Source of the DNA: Haliotis rubra
Lineage: Eukaryota
Assembly: GCF_003918875.1 (NCBI RefSeq)
Contig: NW_025765247.1
Location: 62,001 to 126,000, forward strand
Direction: 5' to 3'
DNA length: 64,000 nucleotides
Position 1 is the first letter of the stretch, and every line of letters starts with the position of its first letter. The position numbers and the translations under genes were made by a program. The notes below the pieces were generated by a model that was given only the letters and a program-made list of their open reading frames with translations, had not been told where the DNA came from and did no database searches. This document shows, piece after piece, positions 361 to 63,595 of this stretch.

Positions 361-740
361 CATACAAAGAAATACATGATGACATGCGAACATCCCCCAC
401 CCCATCCCTCCACCCTCCACATGGGTTTTGCCCAAATTCTTTGTACTCGTCTCAAACACATTTGTTCAACATATCCCGGATTACCAAGTATACGTGCAAA
501 AACATTATCATTGGATCCTAGGCTGACATTTTCACGAATAATATGTGATATTAGCTGACATGGTCATGTTTTTTTTCTAGGTTCAAGGTCTAATGAGGAA
601 ATTGGAAACGTTTTGAAGGCCAAGGTGACAGTTGTCAAAGGGGATATCACCAAACAACTTGTGAGTATTTGTAACTTGATTCCAGGTTCGGTTTCAATCA
701 ACACACTGCTACAGCATGGAACATGATGCAGTTCTTTCAG

Positions 741-958
741 GTGGTTGGTTTGCTGCTTCATGCCGAACAGCAATATTCCTGCTATATGTCGGCGGTCTGT
801 AAATAATCGAGTCTGACCAGACAATCCAGTGATCAACAGCAAGAGCATCGATCTACGATGTCAACCAAGTAAGTGAGCCTGTCCACCCGATCCTGTTAGT
901 CGCCTGTAAGACAAGCATGGGTTGCTGAAGACCAATTCTAATACCGGATCTTCACGGG
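741..958 (-). mobile_element. SINE-like family C
   Basis: Reverse complement, ends ggatcttcacggg. Confidence 0.85.
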
Positions 959-2140
959 CGTGAAATTCTGTTAACATTCCATGCTGTTGTACGTTTCGCA
1001 GTTCTTGCTGCAAAATATAATCTGATATTTGCTTTGATACGGTTAACCCAGTCAACCGAGGGGCCATGATTCACTCTGCGGGATGACTTTTTTAAGACAG
1101 TCAGGCATATCGTGAGTTCGAATTCCAGATTCTCAGTATTTTAGCACCGTCTTAAATGACTAAACATAATCGCACATCCTTTACGACATTCCTTCCACAT
1201 CTAGCAGAATGGAAATATTGTTCAAAGCGACAAAACACCCATGATGTTTGTTGCTGAAACTGCGATAAGGTGCATCACACGAATAACTCTGTGAGGATTT
1301 CCGGGTACAGCAGATACTGATTGTCGAATGACCCAACGGAATTAACAAGCTTGGTGACTGTCCGTGCATGCATGCTAGTGCCATCATCCCTCGGATCCGT
1401 AAAGATCCGGGTAAGAATCGATCTTCAGCAAATGCAAGCTTGTCGTAAGAGACACCAAGCCTGATCCTCCGATCCCGTTAGTTGTGTCTAACGTCAAGCA
1501 TTGGTTGCTGAAGACTGAACCGGCTGTTGAGAAACACCCAACTTATTTTCCCTCTGTCGGGAATAAAACTCAACTAAGATAGATGTTGTAGGTACTATGA
1601 CGTGGTAAGTTTAAGACACCTTAACAATGCCTCTTAGGCAGTCGTAGGTTTAGTCGTAAGTCGCTAATGCTAATACAGCTCCGAGAACTAACCTCTACTT
1701 ATGTCATTTGTGTCCAGGTGGATGTGATCGTGACGTCCGCCAGTAAGAACCCTACATATAAGGATGGAACACTAATAAAAGCAGTATCGGTGGCGGCAGG
1801 TGCCGGCCTTCAGAAGGAATACAAGAAGAAGGTTTCTAAAGGCGTGGCATACGGGCAACTTACTGTGACGTCAGGCGGAAATCTTAGGTGCAAAAGTGTC
1901 TTCAATTGCTGTCTTCCTGCCTGGGACACGGTGAAGGGGAACATTAAGGTAAGCTGAGTTTGGGCCTTTTGACCAGAAAACTGTCAACGTTTCACAGTAT
2001 CCATACGGTTCTCTAACCTTTCGTAAATTAATGTCTGGGAGTTATGATAGTGCAAAAGTCGCTTCATGGAACGGGCGCTAGAAAGATAATATTACCAACT
2101 GTGCGTCGTATATGCAACAGAATTTGAGGTGTGGATTTCA

Positions 2141-3105
2141 ATTTTGGATAAAGGTTATTCATGTGTTCATAATACACCTGGATACAAGTTATTCACATGT
2201 GGAAAGTGCACCTGGATACAAGTTATTCATGTGTGGATAGTACACCTGGATACAAGTTATTCATATGTGGATAGCTAGTGCACCTGGATACAAGTTATTT
2301 ATGTGTGCATAATACACGTGGATACACGTTGTTCATGTGTTCATAATACACCTGGATACAAGTTATTCATGTGTGGATAGTGCACCTGGATGCAAGTTAT
2401 TCATATGTTCATAATACACCTGGATACAAGTTATTCATGTGTGCATAATACACGTGGATACACGTTATTCATGTGTTCATAATACACCTGGATACAACTT
2501 ATTCATGTGTGGATAGTGCACCTGGATACAAGTTATTCACATGTGGATAGTGCACCTGGATACAAGTTATTCATGTGTGGATAGTACACCTGGATACAAG
2601 TTATTCATATGTGGATAGCTAGTGCACCTGGATACATGTTATTTATGTGTGCATAATACACGTGGATACACGTTATTCATGTGTTCATCATACACCTGGA
2701 TACAAGTTATTCATGTGTGGATAGTGCACCTGGATACAGGTTATTCATGTGTTCATAATACACCTGGATACAAGTTATTCATGTGTGGATAGTGCACCTG
2801 GATACAAGTTATTCATGTGTAGATAGTGCACCTGGATACAAGTTATTCCTGTGTTCATAATACATCTGGATACAAGTTATTCATGTGTGGATAGTGCAGC
2901 TTGATACAAGTTATTCATATGTTCATAATACACCTGGATACAAGTTATTCAGATGTGGATAGTACATCTGGATACAACTTATTCATGTGTTCATAATACA
3001 CCTGGATACAAGTTTTTCATTTACGAATAATACACCTGGATACACGTTACTGAGATGTGGATAGTACATATTGCTATGCAAATTATTCAGATGTGCATAG
3101 TACAC
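2141..3105. repeat. 34-bp minisatellite (about 28 copies)
   Basis: Unit cacctggatacaagttattcatgtgtggatagtg. Confidence 0.95.
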
Positions 3106-3220
3106 TTAAAAACATATTTTGCAGTCAAGGTGAAAAGAGGTGAAATGAATGTGGTGAGATCAGGTCAAATGAGTTGGGTGGAATGGAATGTGAATACATG
3201 TGACTTAGGTGAGATACATA

Positions 3221-4135
3221 CGAGGGTCGGTCAAAAAGTACGTAGCCTAACTATATTCTCAATGTCCAATGTTTGAAAAGCTTCCATTTTAGTTTGTAGG
3301 AATCATTAGCAAAGTCGTATAAAAAATTTCACATATGTGGGTAATGTGATTAACGAGATATTAGTCATCACAACACATTGGGGTATAATATTTCTAGAAA
3401 AAATGCAGAAAATGAAAAACGATCCGTCATTTAGTACCTCTTGGATAATGGTATGCCGTAGATAATGTCGTATAAAATATGTTAGTATAGTATTGGATGA
3501 CTTCCCGTCATAATCAACATTCAAAGATTTGGATTGCTTGATTTATGTTTAGACAGGGCTGTTTTTTTAAGGACACACCCATTTTAGTCTTTCAAAAACA
3601 TTGTGTCTAGATATTCAAGCTGGCCCTGTTTACAATATACAGAGAGTTGACACTTGTGTGACCATTCAGTATTTACTTTGAACCTTTAGCATCATGTGTG
3701 AAAAAGTCAAAACATTAGAATAAGTTATGTCCTTATGAAATCGTCGTCTGAACGGGGGTGGGTAGTGTCTCCAAAACAAGCTGTTTCAGTAAACATGAAA
3801 GGGGAATCACTTTAACAAGCGATTGTACTTTCAAATTGCTTTTTTATCCACTTTAATATCTAAGTTTGATTCTAGCGGACGTCTACCTATCTCAAACACA
3901 CAAAATGTTTCTTGCATATTTTGTTACCTGAAGTTTGTGGTGCATTTATTCCAGATTTTGCGCTTTTTGGGGGTACCAAGATAAAATTTCAAACAAAATG
4001 GGGATCGTAAGGCTGAAACGTAGCAAAACCAATTTGCTTGAGGTTGACAGATAATATGTAGAAAAATAAAACATAAGAACAGCTGCATTTGTATCATTTA
4101 CTAGGTCAGGCTCACTACTTTTTGACTGTCCCTCG
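3221..4135. mobile_element. Mariner-type non-autonomous element (MITE)
   Basis: TIRs cgagggtcggtcaaaaagta and tactttttgactgtccctcg with TA on both sides; no ORF. Confidence 0.8.
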
Positions 4136-4490
4136 TATAAGAGAAAAGGACTGCAATTTATGTATTTGAAACGCGTGTTTTCAAACCCGTCAATGTATGA
4201 GTATGTGGCAAAGGTGTCCTTTCAGTTGTATATTGAATGGAAAAAAAACTGACGTCGATTGTAGACGATTGCAAATTTGTTGAAATGTTATCTAGACATG
4301 AATAGATTCAGGGCGACTCCAACCCGCAATCAATGGTTTCCGGAAAAGCTTAGGAATGCAAGAGATGAGTTTTATGAAAGTCGTACAGCCAGGTGAATCC
4401 GCGCCTCAATTCACCGTCATCCCTGTTATCAGTGAGTGGTAGAACCACCATGCTGGTAGAATAACAACACTTACTGTTTCATACCAAATA

Positions 4491-5476
4491 CACTCTTCAA
4501 AAAAGAAAGAAAAAAGAAACGTATAAGCCATTTATTTTAAGTTTAAGAGCAATTATTTCGGTCCACAGTCGGAATTATGTGACGTGCAAGGACTTCGTTG
4601 ATGTACCGATTTGCTGTCAAATTCACATGACCCACCACTAAATCAGATCTTTGTGTGCTGGATATCGCTCCTCACACCATGATACTTTCTCCACCGAATC
4701 TGTCGACCTGTCGAATGCAATTAGGGGCAAAACGTTCATCGGTAAACACGCCGGTGAAGAAGAAATCGTGATTCATCACTGAGCCAGACTCCAGTTTCTA
4801 AGGTTCCAGTTCCGGACTTTACGATACCACTACAAGCGATTGCGTCGATGGAAGTCTCTCAAAACAGGGGCGACAACTGGCCTTCTTGGTCGAATCCCCA
4901 CTTTATGCAATCGATTTCTGACAGTTTGGTGGGAAATTCTTCTCAAACCAGGGATGCGTTGTGCAGTCTCCACGGCTGTGACAAGACGATGACGCAAGTG
5001 AGCAGCCCGGATTTTGCGGTCCTGGACTTGGGTGGTGACTCTTAGTAGGTCACAGGCAAGATATGGTGCTCTGATGAACGTTGAAATGTCGGGCAATTGC
5101 AGACTGCGACTCCCCAGCTTCATGTTGATGTTTCGATTGGCGGTATTCAGATGAGGCAGGATGATTTCCTCTTTTCCAGGAAAAACGAATGACAAACTTA
5201 AACACACCGTTTGCCTTTTTATAGTGGTCAATACCGCATGTTTTTCCGCTTACTTGCACGTGCAGTTTGCTTTGCATGTTTTCATGGTGACGTTTTGGCG
5301 AATATTTCTTCAAACGCTTCTAAAACAAGGGGAAAAAGTCAACATTGCCGCGTTTTGGCGCTGTTTACAAAGATGACGTTTTCACTCAAAGATGACGTTT
5401 TTGGAAAGAAAGAGTATATTTGTATTGTTTTTTCCGCAGCTACACGAGTCCAAATTTCTTTTTTATTTGAAGAGTA
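4491..5476 (-). mobile_element. Internally deleted Tc1-family transposon
   Basis: TIRs cactcttcaaaaaagaaa and tttcttttttatttgaagagta flanked by TA. Remnants RISHQTVRNRLHKVGIRPRRP, QSAIARHFNVHQSTIS, RQVDRFGG. Confidence 0.85.
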
Positions 5477-5974
5477 TAGTTGCATTTTCACAACAAAGGC
5501 ATGCACTACTTTCTTCTATAGGAGGTTTAGACAAGGAGCCTCTCTACCAACATGCTTCTTCAAATGTGTTTTTTTACCTGTAGGTCTTCCAGAAAGCAGT
5601 TTTGTCTTGCCTTGAAACGGCCAACGTCTCCAACTACACTAGCATAGCGTTCCCGACGATGGGTTGCGGTCGACTCGGATACCCTCCTCATTTAGCTGCC
5701 AAAGCTCTGTTCGATGCATTCTCCTTGTTTGAAAGGACAACCAAGAGTGGCTTACAGGAAATAAATATCCTGGTCTACGGCACAGAAGAAAAGATATATA
5801 AGGTACTAGTGAGACATAACCGTCTGTCTTGGAGACATTGCAGTTGGTGGTGGAACATTAAGAATAATTGATTAGGCTTAACACTGCTGTGAAGTTATAT
5901 CTCGATAATGTCAGAGCTAACATTTTAATGTAAGACTAAAGCAGAAAGAAACATCCTACTGCCGCGAATATCAT

Positions 5975-6103
5975 TACTACTACCACAATAACAACTACCA
6001 CAACAACAACTGCTACGACGACTACCACCACCACCACCACCACCACCACTACTACTACTACCACCACCACCACCACCACCACTACCACCACAACCACCAC
6101 CAC
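5975..6103. repeat. (ACC/ACT/ACA)n microsatellite running into an assembly gap
   Basis: Direct reading. Confidence 0.9.
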
Positions 6104-6999
6104 NNNNNNNNNNNNNNNNNNNNNNNNNNNNNNNNNNNNNNNNNNNNNNNNNNNNNNNNNNNNNNNNNNNNNNNNNNNNNNNNNNNNNNNNNNNNNNNNN
6201 NNNNNNNNNNNNNNNNNNNNNNNNNNNNNNNNNNNNNNNNNNNNNNNNNNNNNNNNNNNNNNNNNNNNNNNNNNNNNNNNNNNNNNNNNNNNNNNNNNNN
6301 NNNNNNNNNNNNNNNNNNNNNNNNNNNNNNNNNNNNNNNNNNNNNNNNNNNNNNNNNNNNNNNNNNNNNNNNNNNNNNNNNNNNNNNNNNNNNNNNNNNN
6401 NNNNNNNNNNNNNNNNNNNNNNNNNNNNNNNNNNNNNNNNNNNNNNNNNNNNNNNNNCNNNNNNNNNNNNNNNNNNNNNNNNNNNNNNNNNNNNNNNNNN
6501 NNNNNNNNNNNNNNNNNNNNNNNNNNNNNNNNNNNNNNNNNNNNNNNNNNNNNNNNNNNNNNNNNNNNNNNNNNNNNNNNNNNNNNNNNNNNNNNNNNNN
6601 NNNNNNNNNNNNNNNNNNNNNNNNNNNNNNNNNNNNNNNNNNNNNNNNNNNNNNNNNNNNNNNNNNNNNNNNNNNNNNNNNNNNNNNNNNNNNNNNNNNN
6701 NNNNNNNNNNNNNNNNNNNNNNNNNNNNNNNNNNNNNNNNNNNNNNNNNNNNNNNNNNNNNNNNNNNNNNNNNNNNNNNNNNNNNNNNNNNNNNNNNNNN
6801 NNNNNNNNNNNNNNNNNNNNNNNNNNNNNNNNNNNNNNNNNNNNNNNNNNNNNNNNNNNNNNNNNNNNNNNNNNNNNNNNNNNNNNNNNNNNNNNNNNNN
6901 NNNNNNNNNNNNNNNNNNNNNNNNNNNNNNNNNNNNNNNNNNNNNNNNNNNNNNNNNNNNNNNNNNNNNNNNNNNNNNNNNNNNNNNNNNNNNNNNNNN
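6104..6999. other. Assembly gap (N run)
   Basis: N bases. Confidence 1.
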
Positions 7000-8333
7000 A
7001 TAGTAACAATAGCAGCAGTGGTATTAGTTGGTAGAAGTTAACGTTTTAAGTTTTCAGTATAAAGTGCAATAATAAAACTGAAGGAGTTGTCGTTAGTTAT
7101 TGTGCAAATAATTAGTAAATCTTCTTGTGTGAACGTTTTAACGACACATTTTGTTGGTTTCAGATATTTGAGAATGAGAGAAACAACAGGCTCCTTGGAA
7201 CAGTTAAACGGTCGAAGGGTAGGACTCAATGATACTATTTCGATTCGAAATGCCTGTGTACTTATTTGGTCCAGATTTCTGTTTGTTTGAAAAGGATCAC
7301 ATGTTTGTACGCGTGACTCACGGAGAGGGTTACTATAGGGCCTGTAAGTCTCGCGATGTGCTACTGCCGGTACTAAGCTGATTCCCGGCTCAATTGGCGT
7401 GCTTGGCTGTCACAGCTGTTCACAGTCGTAATAGTTGGCTAATTTAGGGATAGTTAGATCGGAAATTTGTTATTCCTGCAAGGATTATTGGTTCCTTACA
7501 GTCAACTGACAACCATGAGACCATTCGAAAGGATATGAAACGTTGTTTGTCACCGAAAGTACTAAGGTCTCGGGAAGTGTCGTGACCTACTTACGGGCCC
7601 GATACACTACCGGGAAATGAGAACGTGCTCGTGTTTGAGGCGGCTAAAAATGAAATAAACAAAATACATGTACTGTTATTACATTGCAATGTATTTAATA
7701 CAGGCATAATACTTGTGTTTATGGACCGTAAGTTAAGTGTTTCGGCGATGTTTCAGCCAATAAATATAAACGAAAATACACACCCACAAGAAATCTCCAC
7801 TAAAAGGTTGCCCAACTCCGTTAATTGAGTACAATTGTTAGTTTCGCTCCCTTTAATTACACAAAAACAAACGTGTGAAACAGTAGCAAACGTATATGTT
7901 GGCCATTGTACAATTCCGACCTCATCATAAGCATGTGTTTAAGAATCTCTATCAAAACAGTGATGATATCAGGTGTTCGCGTAAAGTTCAGCGTATTCTG
8001 CCCCATCGGTGGCACCCATGCATCATACACACACGCAAAGGCTAGTCAATTGTTCAGCTGAAAACGTATGGTATTATATTTGTTATTGCTGCGTCAAATT
8101 TCCTCCACCTGTCTACTGTACAACTTTAACGTTTTGGGAATGTTTGAAGCTTTCTATACAACATTGATTGAAGTGTATACTTTCAGTTTATGTATACAGC
8201 CCGTACTTATCAGTATATTAGAGACTTATGTAGATGTCTGTATTCAGATGTTGGTGATGGAGATGTCACGGGTGTCGAGATTACAGTCAAAGTCGGCGAG
8301 CTGTCCAAAACCATGGTATGTTCTCTCTGTTAA

Positions 8334-8499
8334 GGGGCGGTGGGGTAGCTGAGTGGTTAAAGGGTCCGATCGTCGCGCCGAAGACCCGGGATCGATTCCC
8401 CACATGGGTTCAATGTGTGAAGCTTGGCGGGTGTCCCCCGCCGTGATATTGCTGAAATATTGCTAAATGCGGCGTAAACCTATACTCACTCACTCACTC
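8334..8499 (+). mobile_element. tRNA-derived SINE, family A
   Basis: Pol III A/B-box head, shared body cacatgggtacaatgtgtgaagccc, tail gcggcgtaaa(c)...(CACT)n. Confidence 0.85.
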
Positions 8500-8687
8500 G
8501 GTGTGTGTTAAACTTACAATATTAGTTAATATTTTGCAGCTGACCAGTCATTGTTGTATTCCCTAGTTGGGCAGCAGCAAGTCCCATGTATTTTGTTACC
8601 ACACAGACGGGATTCGAACTACCGACCTACCGCTCTTGGACAGGCACATATCTACTCATCCTCTATATAGCCCTATGCAGAAGAATA

Positions 8688-8853
8688 AGTGAGTGAGTGA
8701 GTTCAGTTTTACGCCGCTTTTAGCAATATTCGAGCAATATCACGGCGGGGGACACCAAAAATGGGCTTCACACATTGTATCCATGTGGGGAATCAAACCC
8801 TGGTCTTCGGCGTGACGAACGAACGCTTTAACCACACTGCTACCTCTCCGCCC
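8688..8853 (-). mobile_element. tRNA-derived SINE, family A
   Basis: Reverse complement of family A; diverged TSD cagaa(g/c)aataa. Confidence 0.88.
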
Positions 8854-8936
8854 TACAGAACAATAAGGATTTAATGTCAATGCATACTGACTGATTCAGG
8901 CATCCCTTCACGAAAATTAATGTCTGAGGGAAAGTA

Positions 8937-17453: not shown

Positions 17454-17456
<3 letters not shown>

Positions 17457-17494: not shown

Positions 17495-17496
<2 letters not shown>

Positions 17497-52500: not shown

Positions 52501-55500
52501 CGTTGTGAAACCGTTGTGTCATGACGTTACCAATCTACACCCTTCACTTTAACCTTGCGAAATGTTGTGTCATGGCGTTAACAATATACACCCTTCACAT
52601 TAACCTTGTAAAAACGTTATGTCATGACGTTACGAATCTACACCTTTCACATTAACCTTGTGAAAACGTTGTGTCATGACGTTACCAATCTACACCCTTC
52701 ACATTAACCTTGTGAAAACGTTGTGTCATGACATTACCAATATACACCCTTCACATTAACCTTGTGAAAACGTTGTGTCATGACGTTAACAATATACACC
52801 CTTCACATTAACCTTGTGAAAACTTTGTGTCATGACGTTACCAATATACGACCTCCACATTAACTTTGCGAAAACGTTGTGTCATGACGTTACTATACAC
52901 CCTTCACATTAACCTTGTGAAAACGTTGTGTCATGACGTTACCAATATACACCCTTCACATTAACCTTGTGAAAACGTTGTGTCATGACGTTAACAATAT
53001 ACACCCTTCACATTAACCTTGTGAAAACGTTGTGTCATGACGTTACCAATATACACCCTTCACATTAACCTTGTGAAAACGTTGTGTCATGACGTTAACC
53101 AATATACACCCTTCACATTAACCTTGACGTTAACAATGAAAACTTGTGAAATTGTGTCATGACGTTACATTGTGTCAACGTTAACAATATACACCCTTCA
53201 CATTAACCTTCACATGACGTTAACAATACCCTTCACATTAACCTTGTGAAACGTTGTGTCATGACGTTACGAATCTACACCTTTCACATTAACCTTGTGA
53301 AAACGTTGTGTCATGACGTTACGAATCTACACCCTTCACATTAACCTTGTGAAAACATTGTGTCATGACGTTAACAATATACACCCTTCACATTAACCTT
53401 GTGAAAACATTGTGTCATGACGTTACCAATATGTCATTAATGAAAACGTCATGACGTTACCAATATACACCCTTCACAACGTTGTGTCATGACGTTCACA
53501 TTACACCTTTCACTTGTGAAAACGTTGTGTCATGACGTTACCAATATACACCCTTCACATTAACCTTGTGAAAACATTGTGTCATGACGTTAACAATATA
53601 CACCCTTCACATTAACCTTGTGAAAACGTTGTGTCATGACGTTACCAATATACACCCTTCACATTAACCTTGTGAAAACGTTGTGTCATGACGTTAACAA
53701 TATACACCCTTCACATTAACCTTGTGAAACGTTGTGTCATGAACGAATCTACACCTGTCATGACGTTACCAATATACACCCTTCACATTAACCTTGTGAA
53801 AACATGTCATGACGTTAACAATATACACCCTTCACATTAACCTTGTGAAAACATTGTGTCATGACGTTACCAATATACACCCTTCACATTAACCTTGTGA
53901 AAACATTGTGTCATGACGTTACCAATATACACCCTTCACATTAACCTTTGAAAGGCTGAAAACGTTGTGTGTCAGCTGGATTATCATCTGGCTCTGATGT
54001 TTCATATTCAGACCCGGATTCGATTCCTCACATGGGTACAGACCGCCTCCGTGTTGTAGTGGTTATAGCGTCCGCCCGAAGAGCGGAAGGTCGCGGGTTC
54101 GACCCCCGGCCGCGTCATACCAAAAGACGTTAAAATATGGTACTTGTTGGTCCCTGCCTAGCGCTCGGCATTAATGGGTACAAGAAGGACTGGTCGGCTC
54201 GGAGTCAGTATAATGTGTCTGAGTGGGATATTCATGCTTCACTGCGGCATGGTATATCAGTGGGCTAGCACTATAAAACCAGCTTAAGTCTGGGCTAGTA
54301 CAAGCAGCCGCACATACACATACACACGCATGCAAGTCGTCATATGAGCGAAATATTCTCAAGCACGACGTTAAACCAATTTCACCTCACCTCACATGGG
54401 TACAATGTGTGAAGCCCATTCCTTGTGTCCCCCGCCGTTTTACATTCATGCAGCTTCAACTATTTATACTTATTTCATGCACATTTGTCAATGTGAGTTA
54501 TGTTAATGTGGTATGCATTGAAGCATATTGATCATGACGTACATTGCCACATTTAAGAGCAGGGTTAGAATTGACCTTCAGCAACAAATGGCAACAAACG
54601 GGATGGAGTCGTTTGGCTTTGTTGGTGCATGTCATCGTAGCGCATGTTAAGAAATTCACACGCATGGTACCAGTCACTGGGCTATTTATAGACCTCCGTT
54701 ATACATTAGACAACTGCGTTACACAACAAATAGACCTACTTGTCTGGTTCTACAACCTTCCATGCAATACTCCATCACGTATAAATGATTTGTTTCCAGA
54801 AGCGGAACAGTCGGACGGTGTTGCCTCAGCTGACATTGAAGTTGTCCTGAAACTAGGAGATATCGCATTAACAAAGGTAATTAGATGAAGACGGGCCATG
54901 CTCCTCTGACGTGGAACAGATAGATTAATTCAGTGACCATTTACCTTTGTCACAGATGGACCTCAGTTCCCGCTTTGTGAAAAATTGCAATATTTAATGC
55001 TTTATTATGTTTGTTCCGTGAAGATCCGGGTTAGAATTGGTCTTTAGCAACCCATGACTGTAGTAAGCGGAGATCGGGTGACTTGGTAAACACATGTCAT
55101 CGTATCCCAATCGCGTAGATCGATGTTCATGCTGTTGACCACTGGTTCAGACTCGATTATTTACAGACCACCGCCATGTAGCTGGAATATTGCTGAGGCG
55201 GCGTTAAACAACAAAAAACAAACAAATATTATGTTTTCATATGTATTATGTTTTATATTTTGCTTACTAACATGAATTAATCTGTGTTCACAATTTGCTT
55301 ATGACTAGGTGGACGTAATCGTCAACTCAACAAACGAGAGACTCGACTTATCTGGTAGTGAACTGTCCAAGGCCATAGTTAAAGTAGGAGGCGCTGCCAT
55401 ACAGACGGAATGCAAGGAGCTATATCCACAAGGATGCAGAGTTGGGGATGTTGTAAAGACTCGTCCAGGGAAACTACACTGCAAAGAGCTGTATCATTGC

Positions 55501-58500
55501 TGTCTTTCAGACTACAGACGAGAGCATCCCGGTCAGGCTGAGAAGGTGACACTATTTTAATTCCTATAATCATTTATGCGCTGAGGTTTGATTATTCCTT
55601 TACTGAGGTTATCTTCCAAATACATGTAATTTTTTACCAACTGTTAGTATAGGTCATCGTTACACGTGTGACCATGTCAGATGAGGCACCGCAACCTGTG
55701 CAGAGTTAGGTACCTTTTGTACGCCAGAAACCTTGGGTTGTGGGTGTGAATCCAGGTTCGCCCATTTATGCTTGTAGGTTTGTCATTAGACCTGTTCTCG
55801 TGGGTCTCACCAAAATAGTGAACGTCTGAGACATGCGTGACTCCGGGCTTTCCTCCCACATTAAGCTTGCCATTTTGACTGGCAACAGAAATCCTGTTAC
55901 AGGTCGCGTTACCGAAGCTCTCTCACTACTGGGGCGGTGGGGTAGCCTAGTGGTTAAAGTGTTGGCTCGTCACGCCGAAGACCCGGGTTCGAATCCCCAC
56001 ATGGGTACTATGTGTGAAGCCTATTTCTGGTGTCCCCCGCCGTGATGTTGCTTGAATATTGCTAAAAGCGGCGTAAAACCAAACTCAGTCAGTCAGTCTC
56101 TCACTACTAATAAATACTATTTAAACTGGACTTAAAGCCGACTCACTCACTTACTCTCTCACATTAGTGTCATGCCGAAACGACGTGTGGTAGTGCTGTG
56201 TTTTAAATACACGCCACTTGGTTAAACAAAACGGGCGTTTAGGCAGCGTGCTGGCTAAAAGTTAGCGCTGAAGGCTCCTTAATTCGAGTGTCGGTGTTGT
56301 AGCCTAGTAGTTAAAGCGTTCGCTCGTCACTCCGAAGGCCCGGGTTCTATTCCCCATGGGCACAATGTGTGAAGCCCATTTCTGCTGTCCTCTTGTGAAA
56401 TTGCTGGAATAGTGCTAAAAACGGCGTAAAACACAATTCCTTAATTCGAGGATACACATTGAGTGATATTGCTGGTTTATTGATCAAGATTCATTAAACC
56501 TCACTCACTTATTATCCTACTTGCACTTCGTACTGAGAGGAAACCATTATTAATTCCCTAGTTGGTGTAAGAATGTTGATCACACAAGGTTTTGAACAAT
56601 TACAACCGATAACCTGTAAATCAAAATTTACACTGGGATTAAAAATGCCAATGTTTTTTCTCGCATGATATCGAAGGACAAGTATTAAAAATGGCGTTAA
56701 ATATCAACTTATTGCCATCTTGTATTGATATATCCCTCATTTTGCATTACCTGTTTTGAAAATTATGATTTACTTAACCAACTTGTACTGCTATTTTACA
56801 CTGAAATTACATCACCAACGTATGTGTGTGTCCTTCACAGCTTCTAAGGGAGATAATTCTGCAGTGTCTGCACAAAGCGTCTGTAGCTGGTCATAGCAGT
56901 GTGGCCTTCCCTCCCATTGGCACCGGCAAAAGGCAATACCCAACCGATGAGGTGGCAAGAACCTTCAGAGAGGCTATCAAAGACTTCACAAAATCAAACC
57001 ACTTCAGTTCTCTGGCAGAGGTCATGATTGTGTGTTATCACACGAATCAGGACCTATTGAAGGTACAAAAACACATATATTAAAAACAACAATTATCAAC
57101 CAGTCAGATTATGCATAAATATTGATGCTGCAGCTATCAGAAAGAAACCTGAATACATTTCAATTCTGGGAAATGACCAGTCTTGATTCTCTAACAAAAC
57201 TATCAACATGGCGTAAAATGCAAAATGGATGCGAAAACTATTCATGCCAATGCATGATTAATGGTTTCTGAAATGCATTAGTTATAACCAAGATTCAAAA
57301 CATCATTGCTAATTATTGAGAGTCTGACCTTCAACTAAGTTACTTCGGAAAATTGTTACTGTTGTTTGATATAGTAATTGTGTAAGTGATAGTACGAAAT
57401 GTTCCTTACTGAATGTTTCTTCCTACAGATTTTCAAGGATGCTTATGACAGTGAGAAAACGAATCCAAGACACTCCTCCCTTTCAAACATTTCCATGATG
57501 ACAGGTACGGTCATGGTATCACAACCGTTTATAACCTTTAATTTTCTTAATGTCCTCAATGATTAAATCGAATGATGAATTTGACTTTATGTTATGGCTT
57601 GCTCTCTTCAACAGAGTTCCACATAGGCCATGTTCTGCTCATTGTGAAAGAAGGCAACGTCTTTAAGGAGGACGTGGATGTTGTTGTAGTCCCAACCGAC
57701 AACAAAATGTCAGTGTCTTGTGAGTATCTTGTAGGGCGTGTACATGAATTATTTGGGGCGCACAAACCTTTTTTCACAAGTAAATCCGTTTTTGTTACAC
57801 AATATTTAGATCTATCAGAATCATTTTGGTTAATGTTTTCAGGCGAAGTGAAGTGGACCTTTGTACATGAGTTTGGAGACAACACCTTTCGTCAGTGGAA
57901 AGGTAGTTAGAAGATTTCATTTGAAAAAAATGATCGAAAGGTTGTTTTCCATTTCTCTTGGAATGTCAGCACACCATTTCGAGGTACCACTGGACAAATA
58001 GACCCTTTCATTCCTAACTGATCGTCTATCTTATCGTATTCAAACATAAGTATATAAAATATCCATTACATGTTCTGATGCAAAGATCAAAATGGATCCA
58101 AGTGACACATTACAAATTACCCTAACCCATGCAGTCAAACATATAAAACGCTGAACCATCTTGAATTTCGAGTCTCTGCCCAAACATAGAAAAATAGTGA
58201 TAAAACGGATATGAATTCATCATTGAAAATCAGTGAGGACTTAAGTAACAATTTGATTAACTAATATTCTCGCTCATGAGCCGGCCCGATTAGTTAATCG
58301 AGGCAGTTTAAAATTTGAGTTTTCGAAAAACTATTTTACTCATGATAACTGCATGTTGGATTTTGTCAAATCCTTTGTCAGAAACTGGTCACAGTGCGGA
58401 GAGTTTCTGGGCTTTTGGGTTTCCAGAATTACGTGTTATTTATTTTTTTACTCCCAGAGTCCAACATCCGGAAGTCTGGAGGAGTGATGCTGCGTGTACC

Positions 58501-61500
58501 CGGACATCACTGTTCCAGTATCCTGGGCATATCCAGGGACTTCTTTACTGGCGACTTGTTCATGATGATCTGCAAGTGCTTGCGGAAAGCTGAGAAAAAC
58601 AAAGTGACATCCATCGCTATCCCTGTTATGACAGGTGGGTTACTACAACATTCTTTATTCGTGAGAAAAGGGAGAAGGAAGTCCCGACTGATAGTTATCA
58701 TAAAGTGACTGAGGATAAACAAATCCGAATCAATTTGTTGGATTTAATATACTCATGGAAACGAATAAGGAAACACATGGAAGTACAAGTGTTCCTTTAT
58801 TTATTTCCAGAATTTCCACAGTGCAACACAAACCTTGTGAAGAAACCTTGAAAAGAATAACGGAAAGTTGTCCTTTCTTGTGTTCCCTTATGTGTTTCCA
58901 TGAGTATATTAAATCCAACAAATTGATTCGGATTTTGTTTATCCTCAGTCACTTTATGATAACTATCACTCGGGACTTTCTTCTCCCTTTTCTCACGGAA
59001 TGTATATATATTCACAGTCATTGCTGCTCTGCGGTGTTCTTACATTTTGGGGCACATTCTGTGAATTGCGGATGCTAGCAGTAGGGTCGGACACGATTTC
59101 CCTTTCCGAGAACACCCGGTGTCATCTCTAATGTTGAGTGTTCTGATCATATGATATTCACAACTATTGTGCCCTTTACCCAAGATGGCTTGTGTTTCTG
59201 ATAATTGTCAAGAGAGTGTATTCTTTTCCCTGACATTATATATGTCCGTATTATTTTATACAAATCCATGTTTGTATCCAAATAGTTCTATCGTTCTGAT
59301 ATCTGTTGAGTGTCAGTCACATATGAATCATCGCAGTTTTGAAGCCCTTTGATTTTGTTGCAAATTATATACAAATATATGCATGAAGAGAAACCAATGA
59401 TAGATGTTCCGCCCAGGTAACACTAAGGGTGAATCCCTTCCGGCAGTATTGATTAAGTCCGTCAGATGTCTCATGGGCTCACTTGAGTTTGTCCGAGAAG
59501 TCAGGCTCGTCTACACCGACCCTGCAACCATGGTTGCCGCCGTGACGGTGATTGAAGAACAGCTCCCTTCCACATGCGTGGGAAGGTACAGGTTTGCGGA
59601 AACGACCCCGGAACCTCCAGCAGAGGGTAGGTGACAAATAGCCCAGGTGCAGTTACAGTTGGTTATTCAGACGTTTTCAGTTGGAAAGAGCTTCGTTTTA
59701 CGTCCTCCATAACAATGCAGACTTAAGGACATTGTTCTGTGTCGTTTAATGTCAAATCTGTCTTCTATGATACTGGAGCAACCAATATGAAACCTAAATG
59801 AAACCTGTTTTTAAATTCTGGAGAATTACCAAATGATTCCACATTGTGTAAAATGTACATGCAAATATTCATTTCAATGAATCCTCCATCATTCCTGAAA
59901 TGGTTTTACGTGAACAATGCATAAGCTTACATCAAAATCGACTCAAACCATCATTGTTAATTATCGACAGTCTGACAGTTCGCAAACGTAAATACTGTTG
60001 TTTAATAAAAGTGAGTGGGTGAGTTTAGTTGTACGCCGCTCTTAGCAATATTCACCCCCTTCAATTTTTTTTATTGGAGAGGGGGTGTGGGGTGGTTTAG
60101 GGTGGGGGGTGATAACCATTATTGGCATGAGTATATATGGCGGCGGTCTGTAAATAATCGAGTCTGTACCAGACAATCCAGTGATCAACAGCATGAGCAT
60201 CGATCTACGCAATTGGGAACCGATGACATGTGTCAACCAAGTCAGCGAGCCTGACCACCCGATCCCAATAGTCGCCTCTTACGACAAGCATGGGTTACTG
60301 AGGGCCAATATTCTAACCCAGACCTTCACGGGTGTTTAATAGAATAATAGTGTTACAAGTGATAGTACAAAACTGTTCTTACGGAATGTTTAGATACATG
60401 TCCTTGTTGTTATAAGGTTCACAAACGCAGAGTGAAACGGATGACTGTACACTTCAAGGTGGCCTCGCCATGAAAATAGTGTGTAACAACAGGAGGAGTT
60501 TCGGAGAATGTCAGCAGTTCCTAGACAACCTGCTGATGGAAAACCTGTCTGTGGAGACACTGGAGAACCCAACCATCGGCGACCTGACAGAACAGCAGGT
60601 TAGGATCTGGCAAATTATTAAAATATATTCACGAGCCATCCATACGACTCACACATATTGCAGTAATTACTGGTGGGTTGATAATATATGAGTGAGTGAG
60701 TGACGGAGTTTCAGTTTTACGCCGCTCTTAGCAATATTCCAGCAATATCACGGCGGGAGACACCAGAAATGGGCTTCACACATTGTACCCATGTGGGGAA
60801 TCAAATCGGGGTCTTCGGCGTGACGAGCGAACGCTTTAACCACTAGGCTATCCCACCGCCCTGATTATACATATCAAGTAAGCAATACTTCAGACCTTCA
60901 AACAAAGAACAGCCTTAGAAACATTTTTTCAGCCCATAAGTTATAGCAGTATCGAATTAATATAATATGAGAATTATGAAAAACGATTTCACTATCCACA
61001 TGAATCTTTTTAAAAGTGGGAAGTTTATTAATTGTACCTAACATAAGACAGGATATAGAATAACAATTTTGACTTCGAATGATTACAGCCTTATAATCTG
61101 TCTGAGGTGAAGTCCTGACAAGTGCTGATCTTTAAAAAGTCTGAAATTAATAAGTCAGCATTATGCACACAGCTGAAAGGAGTGATATAAAACATTTTGC
61201 ATTCATGTTTCAAGGCTGGTTAAATAGATAATAATTACATAATTACATAATAATGGAACATCAAGTTTCAGGAAATAGAAAACGTTAACTTCAAGAAACA
61301 ACAGAAAACCTTTTAAAAGCAAAAACATATTTAGCAATACTTTAATTCGATAAGATAATATTTGAATTTATAAAACATGAATACCGTTTTGAAGTGATCG
61401 TCGAATACCGTGCAAAATACGATTAGATGTGTTTGCCATCTTTTCTTGAGGGACCTTTGGGGAGTTGTCATTTCATGCATGGGTGCTCGTTTGTAACCCG

Positions 61501-63595
61501 TTGATTCTCAGAATTCAAGGTTAGAAAGAGCAACAAATGATGAACCACATGCACCATCTAGGCACCAGAGGCCATTGGGTCTATGGTTATTGTTTGATCT
61601 GAATTCTCCAAACTCAAAGCTCATAATCATGTTCTTATTCATGAAAAATTGTTTGTATTTTATTGGTAAGTGGTACGTTATGACAGATGACTTCCCGTAT
61701 TACCAGCTTGCAAACTGTCATAGATTAGAAATACGCATTGATGTAGCGGAAAGATTCTGATAGTATCACTTAAATTCCAGGTTCAAGATATACAGCGCTT
61801 GTGTGCTGATATTGACGTGACCTCCGAGGTGGACACCACGAACTGTGTCATTTATCACTCCGGGATGAAGGTTGACGCCATCAAGGCCAAGGGTCAGACC
61901 CAGGAAGTGCTGAAAAATATTGAGTTCGTCCAGAAGAACCTAGAAAAAGCTGAACTTCTTCGTCGTCTTGTGGAATGGTGGTACATCACTGAAGATGGTC
62001 ATGAGATGAGCTTCGCGCCCATGACCAGCATGCTGATTGAAGAAGCTTTCTTGATGAGATCTGCACATCCTACGGCAGTAGTGCAGACAGCGACGTGTAA
62101 AGTCAACATAGACTTTACCTCCATGGATATCAGTTCCCGGGAAAACCCCAACCACAGATTCCAGATTATCAGGAAAAAAGGCCCAGGTAGGTTCACAATG
62201 CAATTTTGTCATGTTTGGTATTAATGTTATTTACGTTTGTTGATGTTCATGTCATACCATGTATATTCCAAATGTATCCTGATTGTTCCTGACATTTATA
62301 TACTTGACAAAGAAAACAGCACACCATGGCGTAGTAAAGACCTCAATTTACACCCGTTGTGTATCTGTTTCTAACAAGCACAAGCAAGGGACCTTTTTCA
62401 AATTTCATTATTCACAACGGCGTCTTTTTTGTTGTAGAATTGTACTAAAAAACAACACAACGTAACCAATTTGCATCGTTTGGCTTGACAAAATTACATC
62501 AGATCCAAATTCAGTATCTTTGGAAGACGCAGAACAAAGTATATCGATTATCCAGACTTAGAGTATGCTTCAATCACAACTAATATGTGAATCCGATTCC
62601 GTATAATTCGATACTCACAATAACCACGAGTGTGAGAATTTCTGTGATGTGAGTTCACTTCCGGAACGAAAATCAATATGTAACCAAGGAAATTTTTGGA
62701 CAAGAATGAAAGTATGACACACTGGAAAAACAAACTTGAATCGTAACAAATGGCATTGATGAGTTTATACTAAAGGAAAGGATGTATCGTTGACTGTTGC
62801 ACCTTCAGCTGTGCCTCTCCCTGACATCTGGGAAGACATGGGAGCCAAGGATATCATCGCGCCAAGGATCAAGGATGGACCTGAAGCTGATAAACTTCGT
62901 CAAATGTTCATGTCCAACGCTGGGAACAAGTATGAGATTATGGGGGTATGTCAGTTGTTAACTGACCCAACTACGTAGAATGTTAAATTAAATTGTTTCA
63001 TAACCTAAAGCATAATATATGCACAGACACGAGTTAAAGCACTGAATACATTAATGATGTAATCAGTGATAGAATATTTCTCAATATAACCCAATTGTCT
63101 TTGTTTGCGCTTTGTTCATCTATATGATGGTGGCCTATAGAAGATGATTCTAGCCCTAATCTTCACGATTATCTTTAAAAACTTCTTTGCCAGGTCGATA
63201 CCTGGTTTTAGCTAAACATTGTGTGATGTTCATATTACAAAACGTGAGTATCATGGTCCTCAAAACATGAAAACATCTCAATAGCACGCCGTGCAATAAC
63301 ATTCCGGTGCAATAACATGCCCGTGAAATGTGACAATCACGTCTTTAAAAGCGAGGACATCGTGATTATGATTTAAATATATGGCATCTAATAAGACACA
63401 TCTTCGTCAACCCTTCCTAGGTATACCGGATTCAGCATAAATACCTGTACGAGCAGTATCAGATACAGAAAGAAGCCATGGAGAAAAACTACCCTCACAA
63501 GAGCAATGAAAGACACCTGTGGCATGGCACCAACGTGGAGGCCATCAAAAACATCAACAAGTATGGATTCAATAGGGGCTACTGTGGAAAGAACG
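49560..63595 (+). CDS. PARP14: Macro-PARP paralog C, PARP14-like mono-ADP-ribosyltransferase (leader, KH-like repeats, macro, degenerate macro, KH, WWE, ART); last exon beyond window
   Basis: Exons 49560-49983, 50596-51522, 54800-54876, 55309-55545, 56841-57062, 57429-57504, 57615-57719, 57843-57902, 58458-58634, 59417-59626, 60417-60598, 61781-62186, 62809-62945, 63421-63595 total 3415 nt, open frame, all GT-AG. Motifs LKLGDIA, VDVIVNSTN, SVAFPPIGTG, VEWWY (WWE), LPDIWEDM, ERHLWHGT, GFNRGYCGKN. The symbol denotes family resemblance, not proven orthology. Confidence 0.88.
50223..50481. other. Assembly gap (N run)
   Basis: N bases. Confidence 1.
52108..53980. mobile_element. Non-autonomous DNA transposon (CCCAGCTAACA...TGTCAGCTGG ends) carrying a 52-bp satellite
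   Basis: Short TIRs at 52108 and 53970-53980; AACGTT-rich subterminal motifs. Confidence 0.55.
52500..53960. repeat. 52-bp satellite (about 28 copies, partly scrambled)
   Basis: Unit gtgaaaacgttgtgtcatgacgttaccaatatacacccttcacattaacctt. Confidence 0.93.
54041..54389 (+). mobile_element. tRNA-headed V-SINE-like element (family B) nested in a family A SINE
   Basis: A/B boxes (tagtggttatagcg, ggttcgaccc); central cataccaaaagac...aatatggtac...ctgcctagcgctcggcatt resembles the V domain; 15-bp TSD cctcacatgggtaca (54026-54040, 54390-54404). A 3' fragment also lies at about 15795-15935. Confidence 0.8.
55016..55226 (+). mobile_element. SINE-like family C
   Basis: TSD tattatgttt. Confidence 0.82.
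55931..56096 (+). mobile_element. tRNA-derived SINE, family A
   Basis: Full length; 12-bp TSD tctctcactact. Confidence 0.9.
56289..56437 (+). mobile_element. tRNA-derived SINE, family A
   Basis: 13-bp TSD tccttaattcgag. Confidence 0.85.
58657..59000. mobile_element. Foldback MITE with about 120-bp inverted arms, just after an exon donor of gene C
   Basis: cgtgagaaaagggagaag...catggaaac is mirrored by gtttccatg...cttctcccttttctcacg. Confidence 0.8.
60011..60332 (-). mobile_element. SINE-like family C with a G-rich insert
   Basis: TSD tgtttaata(a/g)aa. Confidence 0.82.
60690..60861 (-). mobile_element. tRNA-derived SINE, family A
   Basis: Reverse complement of family A, full length. Confidence 0.9.

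What the first reader, a model, noticed from the sequence alone, without database searches (positions are those of the whole stretch)
581..63595. Tandem macro-PARP trio with apparent division of labour: likely active writer, catalytically dead partner, ART-less reader
Seen: three co-oriented paralogs share one exon scaffold but keep different modules. A has macro x2, pseudo-macro, KH and WWE with no ART. B has macro, pseudo-macro and a dead ART. C has KH repeats, macro, pseudo-macro, KH, WWE and an ART with intact HG. Established: vertebrates cluster PARP14, PARP15 and the inactive PARP9 (with DTX3L) as an interferon-induced antiviral ADP-ribosylation module. Inference: this invertebrate lineage rebuilt an analogous active/inactive PARP system independently by local duplication. 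The B and C macrodomains are clearly sister sequences (VNSTN.LDLS.S..S.AIV.VGGA..Q..CKEL.P.G), and a shared degenerate macrodomain marks all three as one subfamily.
Basis: partly seen in the sequence, partly recalled or inferred. Interest (0 to 1): 0.85.

Follow-up and report, generated by a model that had tools for sequence, protein, structure and literature searches.

The report
Abalone tandem macro-PARP genes, one catalytically dead
This abalone locus holds three neighbouring PARP14-family genes, one probably active, one with a dead enzyme domain and one with no enzyme domain. All three are conserved across abalone species, and the dead one arose separately from vertebrate PARP9.

Summary
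The window is Haliotis, almost certainly H. rubra. It carries three co-oriented, spliced PARP14-family genes.

- **A:** only its C-terminal ~55% lies in the window. It has two macro2-like macrodomains, a degenerate macro3, KH-like and WWE regions, and no ART.
- **B:** 596 aa, with a macro2-like macrodomain, a degenerate macro3, and an ART reading R-C-Q in place of H-Y-Φ.
- **C:** about 1234 aa, with H present in the window and H-Y-M in the H. asinina ortholog. Its last exon lies beyond the window.

All three N gaps fall in introns.

The A→B→C order recurs in H. rufescens, and B→C→a fourth macro gene recurs in H. asinina, so "trio" is too narrow. dN/dS is 0.19-0.29 for all three genes and 0.22-0.36 for B's dead ART, so A and B are not decaying copies.

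Trees place A, B, C and one more abalone paralog in a single Haliotis clade (100/100). An AU test rejects B grouping with vertebrate PARP9 (p = 9e-5). Independent origin is therefore supported. The proposed writer/dead-partner/reader division of labour, and any antiviral induction, remain untested.

A's premature stop comes from a single-C deletion in a C run and may be an assembly error.

The genes are already annotated in RefSeq, and tandem PARP14 clusters are known in invertebrates. Earlier scan notes concern this same window only. Interest is moderate.

The parts
577..21039 (+). Gene A, C-terminal part only (about 613 aa lie upstream of the window). It is an ART-less PARP14-like gene, matching H. 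rubra XP_046558407 and orthologous to H. rufescens XP_048249263. Exons: 577-660, 1718-1948, 5584-5802, 7164-7218, 8248-8315, 9202-9432, 11164-11385, 13799-13874, 14207-14311, 16064-16120, 17071-17250, 18323-18532, 19378-19577, 20158-20400/20558, and a candidate terminal mini-exon at 21034-21039.
   Evidence: Ortholog-guided spliced models. Pfam finds two Macro domains and no PARP in the orthologs. dN/dS is 0.26.
577..5802 (+). A macrodomain 1 (macro2-like), encoded by exons 577-660, 1718-1948 and 5584-5802.
   Evidence: Pfam Macro hits. The best solved-structure match is human PARP14 macro2.
8248..11385 (+). A macrodomain 2 (macro2-like), encoded by exons 8248-8315, 9202-9432 and 11164-11385.
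   Evidence: Pfam Macro at E = 1e-12 and 4e-7. In the macro tree it is sister to the B and C macros.
14207..18532 (+).
   Evidence: A family HMM detects it at E = 7e-12. It falls in the clade with vertebrate PARP14 macro3.
20158..20558 (+). A exon encoding the end of the KH-like region plus the WWE. A 1-nt deletion in a C run near 20391-20397 produces a TGA at 20401-20403. Orthologs and two other H. rubra copies read through to a donor at about 20553.
   Evidence: The Pfam KH_PARP14_8 and WWE hits are sub-threshold.
21034..21039 (+). Candidate terminal mini-exon of A. With the phase-1 G of the upstream donor it reads GCC TAG. It sits where ART exon 1 would begin and aligns with the H. rufescens mini-exon that ends the RefSeq protein.
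26212..39548 (+). Gene B, complete at 11 exons and about 596 aa. It matches the H. rubra RefSeq 'PARP14-like isoform X2' (P0235). Exons: 26212/26224-26388 (donor uncertain, inside a 96-bp tandem repeat), 29835-29876, 30133-30369, 32774-32992, 33294-33366, 34215-34316, 36736-36909, 37329-37511, 37944-38098, 38499-38667, 39280-39545, with the stop at 39546-39548.
   Evidence: The H. rufescens ortholog maps exactly onto 11 exons. dN/dS is 0.28.
29835..32992 (+). B macrodomain (macro2-like). It keeps the adenine-binding Asp and the G-T-G loop.
   Evidence: Pfam hits, alignment A1 and the macro tree.
33366..37511 (+). B degenerate macro3-type domain. It lacks the 57-60 nt mini-exon that A and C have, and its loop-1/helix-1 region is deleted.
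   Evidence: Exon-level paralogy and alignment A4. The AF2 model has pLDDT 80.6, and its Foldseek hits are all macrodomains, including PARP14 macro3 4ABK.
37944..39545 (+). B pseudo-ART domain. The triad positions are R (38595-38597, CGT), C (39303-39305, TGC) and Q (39465-39467, CAA). The second nicotinamide-stacking Tyr is also Cys (39324-39326).
   Evidence: Pfam PARP, PDB alignments to PARP15, triad table and codon coordinates. dN/dS is 0.22-0.36.
49560..63595 (+). Gene C. The first 14 exons lie in the window, and the last exon (about 98 aa, carrying the Y and third triad residue) lies beyond it. It is orthologous to H. asinina XP_067657901 (1234 aa). Exons: 49560-49983, 50596-51522, 54800-54876, 55309-55545, 56841-57062, 57429-57504, 57615-57719, 57843-57902, 58458-58634, 59417-59626, 60417-60598, 61781-62186, 62809-62945, 63421-63595.
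   Evidence: dN/dS is 0.19.
54800..57062 (+). C macrodomain (macro2-like).
   Evidence: Pfam hits. The best PDB match is PARP14 macro2.
57504..59626 (+). C degenerate macro3-type domain.
   Evidence: Family HMM at E = 2e-12, macro tree and AF2 pLDDT of about 90 over this domain.
60417..62186 (+). C KH-like and WWE exons (182 + 406 nt, 196 codons, phase 1 to phase 1). These are exactly the two exons that B lacks.
   Evidence: Sub-threshold Pfam WWE, WWE_1 and KH_PARP14_8 hits.
62809..63595 (+). C ART domain, N-terminal half, with the triad His at 63523-63525 (CAT).
   Evidence: Pfam PARP and PDB alignment. The ortholog triad is H-Y-M, and Foldseek matches PARP15/14/10 ART at TMt 0.92.
6104..6999 (.). 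Assembly gaps, 6104-6457 and 6459-6999, inside A's intron between 5802 and 7164.
   Evidence: Ortholog residues are continuous across them and both flanking exons are phase 0.
50223..50481 (.). Assembly gap inside C's intron 1, between 49983 and 50596.
   Evidence: Ortholog residues 141 and 142 join across it at phase 1.

Best explanation
The window shows part of a tandem cluster of PARP14-family (macro-PARP) genes in an abalone. The genes were made by duplications within the Haliotis lineage from an ancestor with the layout macro2-type, macro3-type, KH, WWE, ART. Each copy then lost different modules.

- **C** keeps the full C-terminal layout and an H-Y-M triad, so it is predicted to be an active mono-ADP-ribosyltransferase.
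- **B** lost exactly the two KH and WWE exons, a loss that preserves reading phase. It also lost every NAD+-contacting residue of its ART (R-C-Q or R-S-L). It keeps an intact macro2-like ADP-ribose-binding domain. It is a conserved pseudo-enzyme.
- **A** keeps two macro2-like domains, the degenerate macro3, the KH-like region and the WWE. It ends in a tiny terminal exon with an immediate stop at the position where the ART would begin. It is an ART-less protein built of reader-type domains.

Shown here: the gene structures, the catalytic residues, conserved synteny, purifying selection on all three genes, and an origin independent of vertebrate PARP9, PARP14 and PARP15.

Inferred only: that C writes mono-ADP-ribose marks, and that A and B act as non-catalytic readers, scaffolds or regulators of that signalling, possibly in antiviral defence as in vertebrates.
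For: Gene models:
- All models use GT-AG or GC-AG introns.
- My B model equals the H. rubra RefSeq protein except in exon 1.
- Domain calls rest on Pfam and PDB searches.

Catalytic residues:
- B has R-C-Q in the window and in H. asinina, and R-S-L in H. rufescens and H. cracherodii. The C ortholog has H-Y-M.
- Among about 170 macro-PARP ARTs, the triad His is replaced only in the B clade, in fish PARP9 and in one further sequence, P0125.

Conservation:
- H. rufescens has A(1392 aa)→B(596)→C(1231), all co-oriented.
- H. asinina has B(580)→C(1234)→a fourth macro gene.
- dN/dS with bootstrap CI: A 0.26 (0.21-0.32), B 0.28 (0.22-0.36), B's ART 0.22 (0.14-0.33) and 0.36 (0.22-0.59), C 0.19 (0.15-0.23).

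Phylogeny:
- On the ART tree B is sister to C at 97/82, and the two join P0007 at 100/99.
- On the concatenated tree the Haliotis clade has 100/100 support, and an AU test rejects B + PARP9 at p = 9e-5.
- The degenerate macros of A, B and C form one clade (98) inside the macro3-type clade.

Other support:
- The conserved terminal mini-exon of A is seen.
- B-type proteins appear only in Haliotis among 5.8 billion clusters.
Against: - No expression, binding or activity data could be reached. Two abalone herpesvirus transcriptome papers do not mention PARPs.
- C's Tyr and third triad residue are not in the window and are taken from the H. asinina ortholog.
- A carries a premature stop in this assembly.
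- A's KH/WWE part is less constrained, with omega 0.50 and CI 0.31-0.82.
- The ART alone does not reject B + PARP9 (p = 0.207).
- The macro3-type domains have lost the G-T-G loop, so they may not bind ADP-ribose.
- dN/dS comes from pairwise comparisons of only two or three species.
Confidence: 0.75

Rival explanations
1. This is ordinary birth-and-death of an immune gene family. On this view A and B are decaying partial duplicates (pseudogenes) of a functional C-like gene and have no function of their own.
For: - A has a premature TGA in its WWE exon in this assembly.
- A has lost the ART, and B has lost KH, WWE and all NAD+ contacts.
- About a third of the 150 related representative proteins also lack an ART.
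- Introns are full of transposons and minisatellites.
Against: - Open reading frames are intact and all splice sites are canonical.
- Order and architecture are the same in H. rufescens, H. cracherodii and H. asinina.
- dN/dS is 0.26-0.29, with upper confidence limits at or below 0.41.
- The dead triad position R is kept in four species.
- The A frameshift is a single C lost from a C run. Divergence downstream of it is not raised compared with a 98%-identical second copy, so it is either very recent or an assembly error.
Confidence: 0.1
2. B is an ancient ortholog of vertebrate PARP9. On this view the active/inactive macro-PARP pair predates the split of molluscs and vertebrates.
For: - Both have a substituted triad His and sit beside an active PARP14-like gene.
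- On the ART alone a B + PARP9 clade is not rejected (lnL difference 16.9, p-AU 0.207).
Against: - The concatenated three-domain AU test rejects the clade (p = 9e-5).
- B's macro, degenerate macro and ART each group with C's inside a Haliotis-only clade.
- PARP9 carries macro1- and macro2-type domains, whereas B carries macro2-like and macro3-type domains (PMC10221186).
- PARP9 is reported only from jawed vertebrates (PMC10221186).
- Patella and Gigantopelta sequences fall outside the A/B/C clade.
Confidence: 0.02
3. A and B are one gene with an internal duplication (macro, macro, macro3, KH, WWE, then macro, macro3, ART), or else a mis-assembly has split one gene in two.
For:
- The two genes are co-oriented and lie only about 5.6 kb apart.
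Against: - B has its own ATG exon at 26212/26224.
- In H. rufescens, H. cracherodii, H. asinina and H. rubra, B's counterpart is a separate protein of 580-596 aa; RefSeq accessions were seen for the first two.
- A's WWE exon splices into a conserved mini-exon with an immediate stop.
- B's domains are closer to C's than to A's, so the complementary losses are independent events.
Confidence: 0.03
4. B's ART keeps some unusual catalytic or ligand-binding activity despite the lost triad, rather than being a pure scaffold.
For: - The domain is under purifying selection (omega 0.22-0.36).
- Arg at the His position is conserved in four species.
- PARP9 was once credited with a DTX3L-dependent activity (cited in PMC10221186).
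Against: - H, both Tyr residues and the third triad position are all replaced.
- The residues at the Tyr and third positions differ between species (C/S and Q/L), which does not suggest a new fixed active site.
Confidence: 0.1

Closest known systems
Vertebrate PARP14 (ARTD8)
   Same: - The order macro, macro3, KH8, WWE, ART is shared.
- C's residues 640-1040 align collinearly with primate PARP14 residues 1217-1609.
- The C ortholog's H-Y-M triad also occurs in Polypterus PARP14.
- The ART fold matches at TMt 0.92.
   Different: - None of A, B or C groups with the macro1-type (hydrolase) clade.
- No RRM hit was found in C or in A's orthologs.
- C has one canonical macro plus a degenerate macro3.
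- C is a lineage-specific paralog, not a one-to-one ortholog.
Vertebrate PARP9 (with DTX3L)
   Same: Both are macro-PARPs with a substituted triad His, both lie next to an active PARP14-like gene, and both are retained by selection.
   Different: - The origin is independent (AU p = 9e-5).
- PARP9 has macro1 and macro2 and a Q-Y-I/T triad. B has macro2-like and macro3-type domains and R-C-Q or R-S-L, so it has lost the Tyr as well.
- No Deltex-like gene was seen in the window (partial scan).
Mammalian PARP15
   Same: - The architecture macro2-type, macro3-type, ART without KH or WWE is the same as B's, which is why RefSeq names B's orthologs 'PARP15-like'.
- PARP15 gives the best PDB sequence matches for both the B and C ARTs.
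   Different: - PARP15 is catalytically active (H-Y-L) and restricted to mammals (PMC10221186).
- B is inactive by sequence and arose within abalones.
PARP13/ZAP
   Same: It is a PARP-family protein with an inactive ART that is kept for a non-catalytic function in antiviral defence (PMC10221186, discussion).
   Different: It has zinc fingers rather than macrodomains, and it is not closely related. It scores only E = 3e-4 against B's ART exon.
Tandem PARP14-like clusters in invertebrates (amphioxus, sponges; Perina et al. 2014 as cited in PMC13224862)
   Same: PARP14-like genes are multiplied locally and sit side by side on one chromosome.
   Different: Those reports, as cited, do not describe a member with a dead ART or a conserved ART-less member under purifying selection. 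I did not read the primary paper.

Membership tests
PARP14-family macro-PARP | At least one macrodomain (Pfam PF01661) | tested here: met
   Pfam finds Macro on exons of A, B and C and on their orthologs, at E = 2.6e-44, 4e-15 and 2e-22.
PARP14-family macro-PARP | C-terminal PARP catalytic (ART) domain (PF00644) | tested here: met
   Met for B and C. Not met for A: there is no PARP hit in the window or in three orthologs. A therefore belongs by descent, not by architecture.
PARP14-family macro-PARP | H-Y-hydrophobic triad typical of active mono-ARTs | tested here: inconclusive
   In C the His is in the window (63523-63525), while Tyr and Met are seen only in the H. asinina ortholog. B does not meet this feature, with R-C-Q. 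A has no ART.
PARP14-family macro-PARP | KH8 and WWE between macro3 and the ART | tested here: inconclusive
   In A and C all Pfam hits are below the gathering score. However, the region is collinear with PARP14 residues 1217-1609 and folds confidently. No fold search was run on these two domains separately. B lacks both exons.
PARP14-family macro-PARP | Macro1-type (hydrolase) domain at the first macro position | tested here: not met
   No macro of A, B or C falls in the macro1 clade (100* support). Both A's first macro and C's macro match PARP14 macro2 best.
Vertebrate PARP9 | Groups phylogenetically with PARP9 | tested here: not met
   The concatenated AU test gives p = 9e-5. The ART-only test gives p = 0.207 and is inconclusive.
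Vertebrate PARP9 | Macro1 and macro2 domain composition | tested here: not met
   B has a macro2-like domain and a degenerate macro3-type domain.
Vertebrate PARP9 | Head-to-head DTX3L (Deltex) partner gene | tested here: inconclusive
   Pfam scans of the larger non-PARP ORFs gave only transposon domains. The scan was not exhaustive and the flanks outside the window were not examined.
Mammalian PARP15 | Macro2, macro3 and ART without KH or WWE | tested here: met
   B's exon structure and domain tree match this layout. Orthology is not met, because B sits inside the Haliotis clade, and neither is the active triad.
Interferon-type antiviral induced module | Induction by virus or dsRNA | not testable with these tools
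   No expression data were reachable. The abalone HaHV-1 transcriptome papers searched do not mention PARPs.

The most novel reading that the evidence does not exclude
Abalones independently evolved a PARP9-like pseudo-enzyme. On this reading B, kept next to the active writer C for the whole history of the genus, acts as an obligate non-catalytic partner of C, for example a heterodimeric regulator or an ADP-ribose-reading adaptor. The ART-less A acts as a multi-macro reader or scaffold. This would make the writer plus dead-partner arrangement of macro-PARPs a convergent design rather than a vertebrate accident.
Probability: 0.25. Interest if true: 0.6.

Novelty: new variant of a known kind. 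Interest (0 to 1): 0.4.

Why it matters
Vertebrate PARP9 and PARP13 are the textbook cases of antiviral PARPs that lost catalysis but are still kept. Why that loss would be useful remains an open question.

This locus offers a second, independent macro-PARP with a dead ART. It has a different domain make-up (macro2/macro3 rather than macro1/macro2), it is under purifying selection, and it lies next to its active sister gene. That makes it a natural replicate. If B and C interact or co-regulate, the writer plus dead-partner design is convergent.

The locus also gives a tractable marker for abalone antiviral genetics, where haliotid herpesvirus is an aquaculture problem.

The genes themselves are ordinary members of a family known to duplicate in tandem, and they are already annotated in RefSeq. 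The value therefore lies in the comparison, not in the discovery of a new system.

Tried and rejected
- **A and B as one gene.** Rejected. B has its own start exon, A has a conserved terminal mini-exon, and B appears as a separate protein in four species.
- **B as a PARP9 ortholog.** Rejected on three concatenated domains. The ART alone was inconclusive.
- **A and B as decaying copies.** Rejected by dN/dS and synteny.
- **A's frameshift as evidence of pseudogenisation.** Weakened. It is one C lost from a C run, and downstream divergence is not raised compared with a 98%-identical copy. My earlier impression of lower protein identity after the shift was an artefact of overlapping tblastn alignments.
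- **ART remnants after A.** tblastn found none at E < 5.
- **Sequence search of the degenerate macro against solved structures.** No hit. Only a family HMM, the tree and a fold search recognised it. That AF2 model used an alignment of macro3 homologs, so it leans towards the macro fold.
- **Pfam calls for KH and WWE.** All stayed below the curated thresholds.
- **Fold search of the 595-residue C model.** ART hits swamped the list, so it says nothing about the KH and WWE folds.
- **Literature on abalone or oyster PARP14 expression.** Nothing usable was found.
- **Identity of the fourth gene downstream in H. asinina.** tblastn with six abalone paralogs gave no match to the part I held.


Full report
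**What the window is**

The 64-kb window is eukaryotic, at about 40% G+C, with many SINE-like repeats and intronic minisatellites. Translated exons are 100% identical to Haliotis rubra RefSeq proteins. These are XP_046558407 (P0158) for gene A and a 'PARP14-like isoform X2' (P0235) for gene B, both from contig QXJH01001319.1 of GCA_003918875.1. The window is therefore abalone, almost certainly blacklip abalone.

**Gaps first**

- The N runs at 6104-6457 and 6459-6999 lie in an intron of gene A, between exons 5584-5802 and 7164-7218.
- The N run at 50223-50481 lies in intron 1 of gene C, between 49983 and 50596.
- Ortholog proteins align without missing residues across both junctions, and the exon phases agree.
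- I did not look up or fill the missing letters.

**Gene models**

I retrieved relatives with a profile of the four first-half macro exons (alignment A1). I then used the closest full-length proteins as guides for a splice-aware mapping.

- **Gene A.** It enters the window at 577, and about 613 residues lie upstream. It runs through 14 exons to 20400/20558.
- **Gene B.** It is complete at 11 exons, from 26212/26224 to 39545. From exon 2 onward my model is identical to the RefSeq protein. Only the donor of exon 1, inside a 96-bp tandem repeat, is uncertain.
- **Gene C.** It starts at 49560 and has 14 exons up to 63595. Its last exon, about 98 residues, is beyond the window.
- All introns are GT-AG, apart from one GC donor in A at 11385.

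**Domains**

*Canonical macrodomains*
- Pfam finds Macro on the expected exons of all three genes and PARP on B and C.
- On the orthologs it finds two Macro domains and no PARP for A. It finds Macro plus PARP for B and for C.
- Each canonical macrodomain is split over three exons with conserved phases.
- The best solved-structure matches for C's macro and for A's first macro are human PARP14 macrodomain 2.

*The 'pseudo-macro'*
- It is real. A family HMM detects it in A (E = 7e-12) and in C (E = 2e-12). B's copy shows only as fragments in its H. rufescens ortholog.
- In a tree of single macrodomains the three copies form one clade (98) inside the macro3-type clade (99). That clade also holds vertebrate PARP14 macro3.
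- An AF2 model of B's copy has pLDDT 80.6 but leans on a macro3 alignment. It matches only macrodomain structures, including PARP14 macro3.
- The G-T-G phosphate loop is lost in all three copies. B also lacks a mini-exon and the loop-1/helix-1 region. Canonical ADP-ribose binding by these domains is therefore doubtful.

*KH and WWE*
- The assignments in A and C rest on sub-threshold Pfam hits.
- They also rest on a collinear BLASTP alignment of C's residues 640-1040 with primate PARP14 residues 1217-1609, and on a confident AF2 model with mean pLDDT 87.5.
- The N-terminal 'KH repeats' of C are weakly supported. That region is nevertheless homologous to A's N-terminus.

**Catalytic residues**

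- B's LLWRGT aligns with PARP15 LLFHGT, and B's YGKGMCFA aligns with YGKGTYFA.
- With the third position the B triad is R-C-Q, and the second stacking Tyr is Cys as well.
- C has HLWHGT in the window. Its H. asinina ortholog has H-Y-M, the commonest triad in my sample.
- Among roughly 170 macro-PARP ARTs, the triad His is replaced only in the abalone B clade, in fish PARP9 (Q-Y-I) and in one further sequence, P0125.

**How A ends**

- In H. rufescens the WWE exon uses a phase-1 donor and splices to a tiny exon about 390 bp downstream, which reads Ala-Gly-stop.
- The window has the homologous acceptor at 21034 and would read Ala-stop.
- This is the position and phase at which C's first ART exon begins. 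The lack of an ART in A is therefore a fixed gene structure and not a truncation by the assembly.
- Separately, the window's copy has lost one C from a C run near 20391-20397, which gives a TGA at 20401-20403.
- Two other H. rubra copies and the H. rufescens gene read through. Divergence after the shift is not raised compared with a 98%-identical copy.
- I cannot tell a very recent truncation from a homopolymer assembly error.

**How B lacks KH and WWE**

- In C the two exons concerned (182 + 406 nt) run from phase 1 to phase 1.
- B joins the last macro3 exon (phase 1) directly to the first ART exon (phase 1).
- This fits a clean two-exon loss from a C-like ancestor.

**Conservation**

- H. 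rufescens has A (1392 aa), B (596 aa) and C (1231 aa) in the same order and orientation.
- H. asinina has B (580 aa) and C (1234 aa), followed by a fourth co-oriented gene with RRM_PARP14_3 and Macro domains.
- H. cracherodii has A and B orthologs.
- B's Arg at the His position is kept in all four species. The Tyr position is Cys or Ser.
- Pairwise Nei-Gojobori dN/dS with bootstrap intervals:

| Gene or region | Comparison | dN/dS | 95% CI |
|---|---|---|---|
| A, whole | H. rufescens | 0.26 | 0.21-0.32 |
| A, KH/WWE part | H. rufescens | 0.50 | 0.31-0.82 |
| B, whole | H. rufescens | 0.28 | 0.22-0.36 |
| B, whole aligned part | H. asinina | 0.29 | 0.20-0.41 |
| B, dead ART | H. rufescens | 0.22 | 0.14-0.33 |
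| B, dead ART | H. asinina | 0.36 | 0.22-0.59 |
| C, whole | H. asinina | 0.19 | 0.15-0.23 |

- A and B are therefore maintained genes.

**Origin**

- A careful ART tree puts the four B sequences (100/100) as sister to C (97/82). The two then join another abalone paralog, P0007 (100/99). Fish PARP9 sits on a long separate branch.
- On the ART alone an AU test does not reject B + PARP9 (p = 0.207).
- On a concatenation of the macro2-type, macro3-type and ART domains, A, B, C and P0007 form a Haliotis clade with 100/100 support. The AU test rejects B + PARP9 at p = 9e-5.
- PARP9's two macros group with PARP14 macro1 and macro2, whereas B's are macro2-like and macro3-type. This agrees with Delgado-Rodriguez et al. 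2023 (PMC10221186).
- That paper also reports PARP9 only in jawed vertebrates, and says the invertebrate macro-PARPs it examined resemble PARP14.
- Patella and Gigantopelta sequences fall outside the abalone clade. A search of 5.8 billion protein clusters with B's C-terminal 362 residues found only Haliotis proteins, within that tool's length and word limits.

**Interpretation**

An abalone lineage made, by local duplication and domain loss, an active-looking macro-PARP, a catalytically dead one and an ART-less one, and has kept them side by side.
- The functional part is inference by analogy. It covers the division of labour, a partnership like PARP9 with PARP14, and antiviral induction. I could reach no expression or interaction data, and two abalone herpesvirus transcriptome papers do not mention PARPs.
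- Tandem PARP14-like clusters in invertebrates are already described (Perina et al. 2014, as cited in PMC13224862).
- I therefore rate this a new variant of a known kind, of moderate interest, and not the 0.85 first given.
- The earlier scan notes that overlap (s1-353950, s1-354016) are on this same window. The scan has not reported this on other DNA.

Noticed in passing
window 44361-46012 (+): Three adjacent ORF pieces carry QRICH1, DUF3504 and Phage_integrase Pfam domains. This looks like a Crypton-type tyrosine-recombinase element, broken by stops, lying between genes B and C.
   Followed up: partly
window 12034-12699 (-) and 4830-5228 (-): Tc1/mariner-type transposase fragments (DDE_3 at E = 4e-12, HTH_Tnp_Tc3_2 at E = 8e-7) lie inside introns of gene A.
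   Followed up: partly
window 2145-3068, 27267-29546, 30451-32417, 39687-41361, 52498-53953: Large minisatellites with units of 34, 28, 35, 130 and 52 bp and up to 83 copies lie in introns and spacers of the three genes. Their six-frame ORFs clutter any ORF list.
   Followed up: no
window 26250-26444: A 96-bp tandem duplication (2 copies, 98% identical) overlaps B's first coding exon and repeats a 32-residue peptide. My model and RefSeq choose different donors within it.
   Followed up: partly
L004 (H. rubra QXJH01001319.1:1-23838) and L005 (QXJH01000822.1): The H. rubra assembly holds two further A-like copies, 96-98% identical in the WWE exon and without the frameshift. One lies at the start of the same contig as the window's copy. 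They may be recent segmental duplicates or uncollapsed haplotigs.
   Followed up: partly
L003:28336-32199 (H. asinina CM074540.1): A fourth co-oriented macro gene (more than 802 aa, with RRM_PARP14_3 and Macro) follows C, so the cluster is larger than three genes. Its relation to the other abalone paralogs was not resolved.
   Followed up: partly
proteins P0133, P0071, P0060 and relatives (Mytilus, Sinanodonta, Ylistrum): A long-branched clade of short bivalve macro-PARPs (about 620-800 aa; one member is 1260 aa) carries an H-Y-E triad, the type associated with poly-ADP-ribosylation, instead of H-Y-hydrophobic.
   Followed up: no
window about 20840-20960 and many other sites: A tRNA-derived SINE with a tRNA-like head is scattered through the introns on both strands and produces most of the high-identity ORF-to-ORF matches.
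   Followed up: no
P0151 (H. rufescens B isoform X2, 517 aa): An annotated isoform of the B ortholog skips the 237-nt first-half macro exon, which would remove half of the only intact macrodomain.
   Followed up: no
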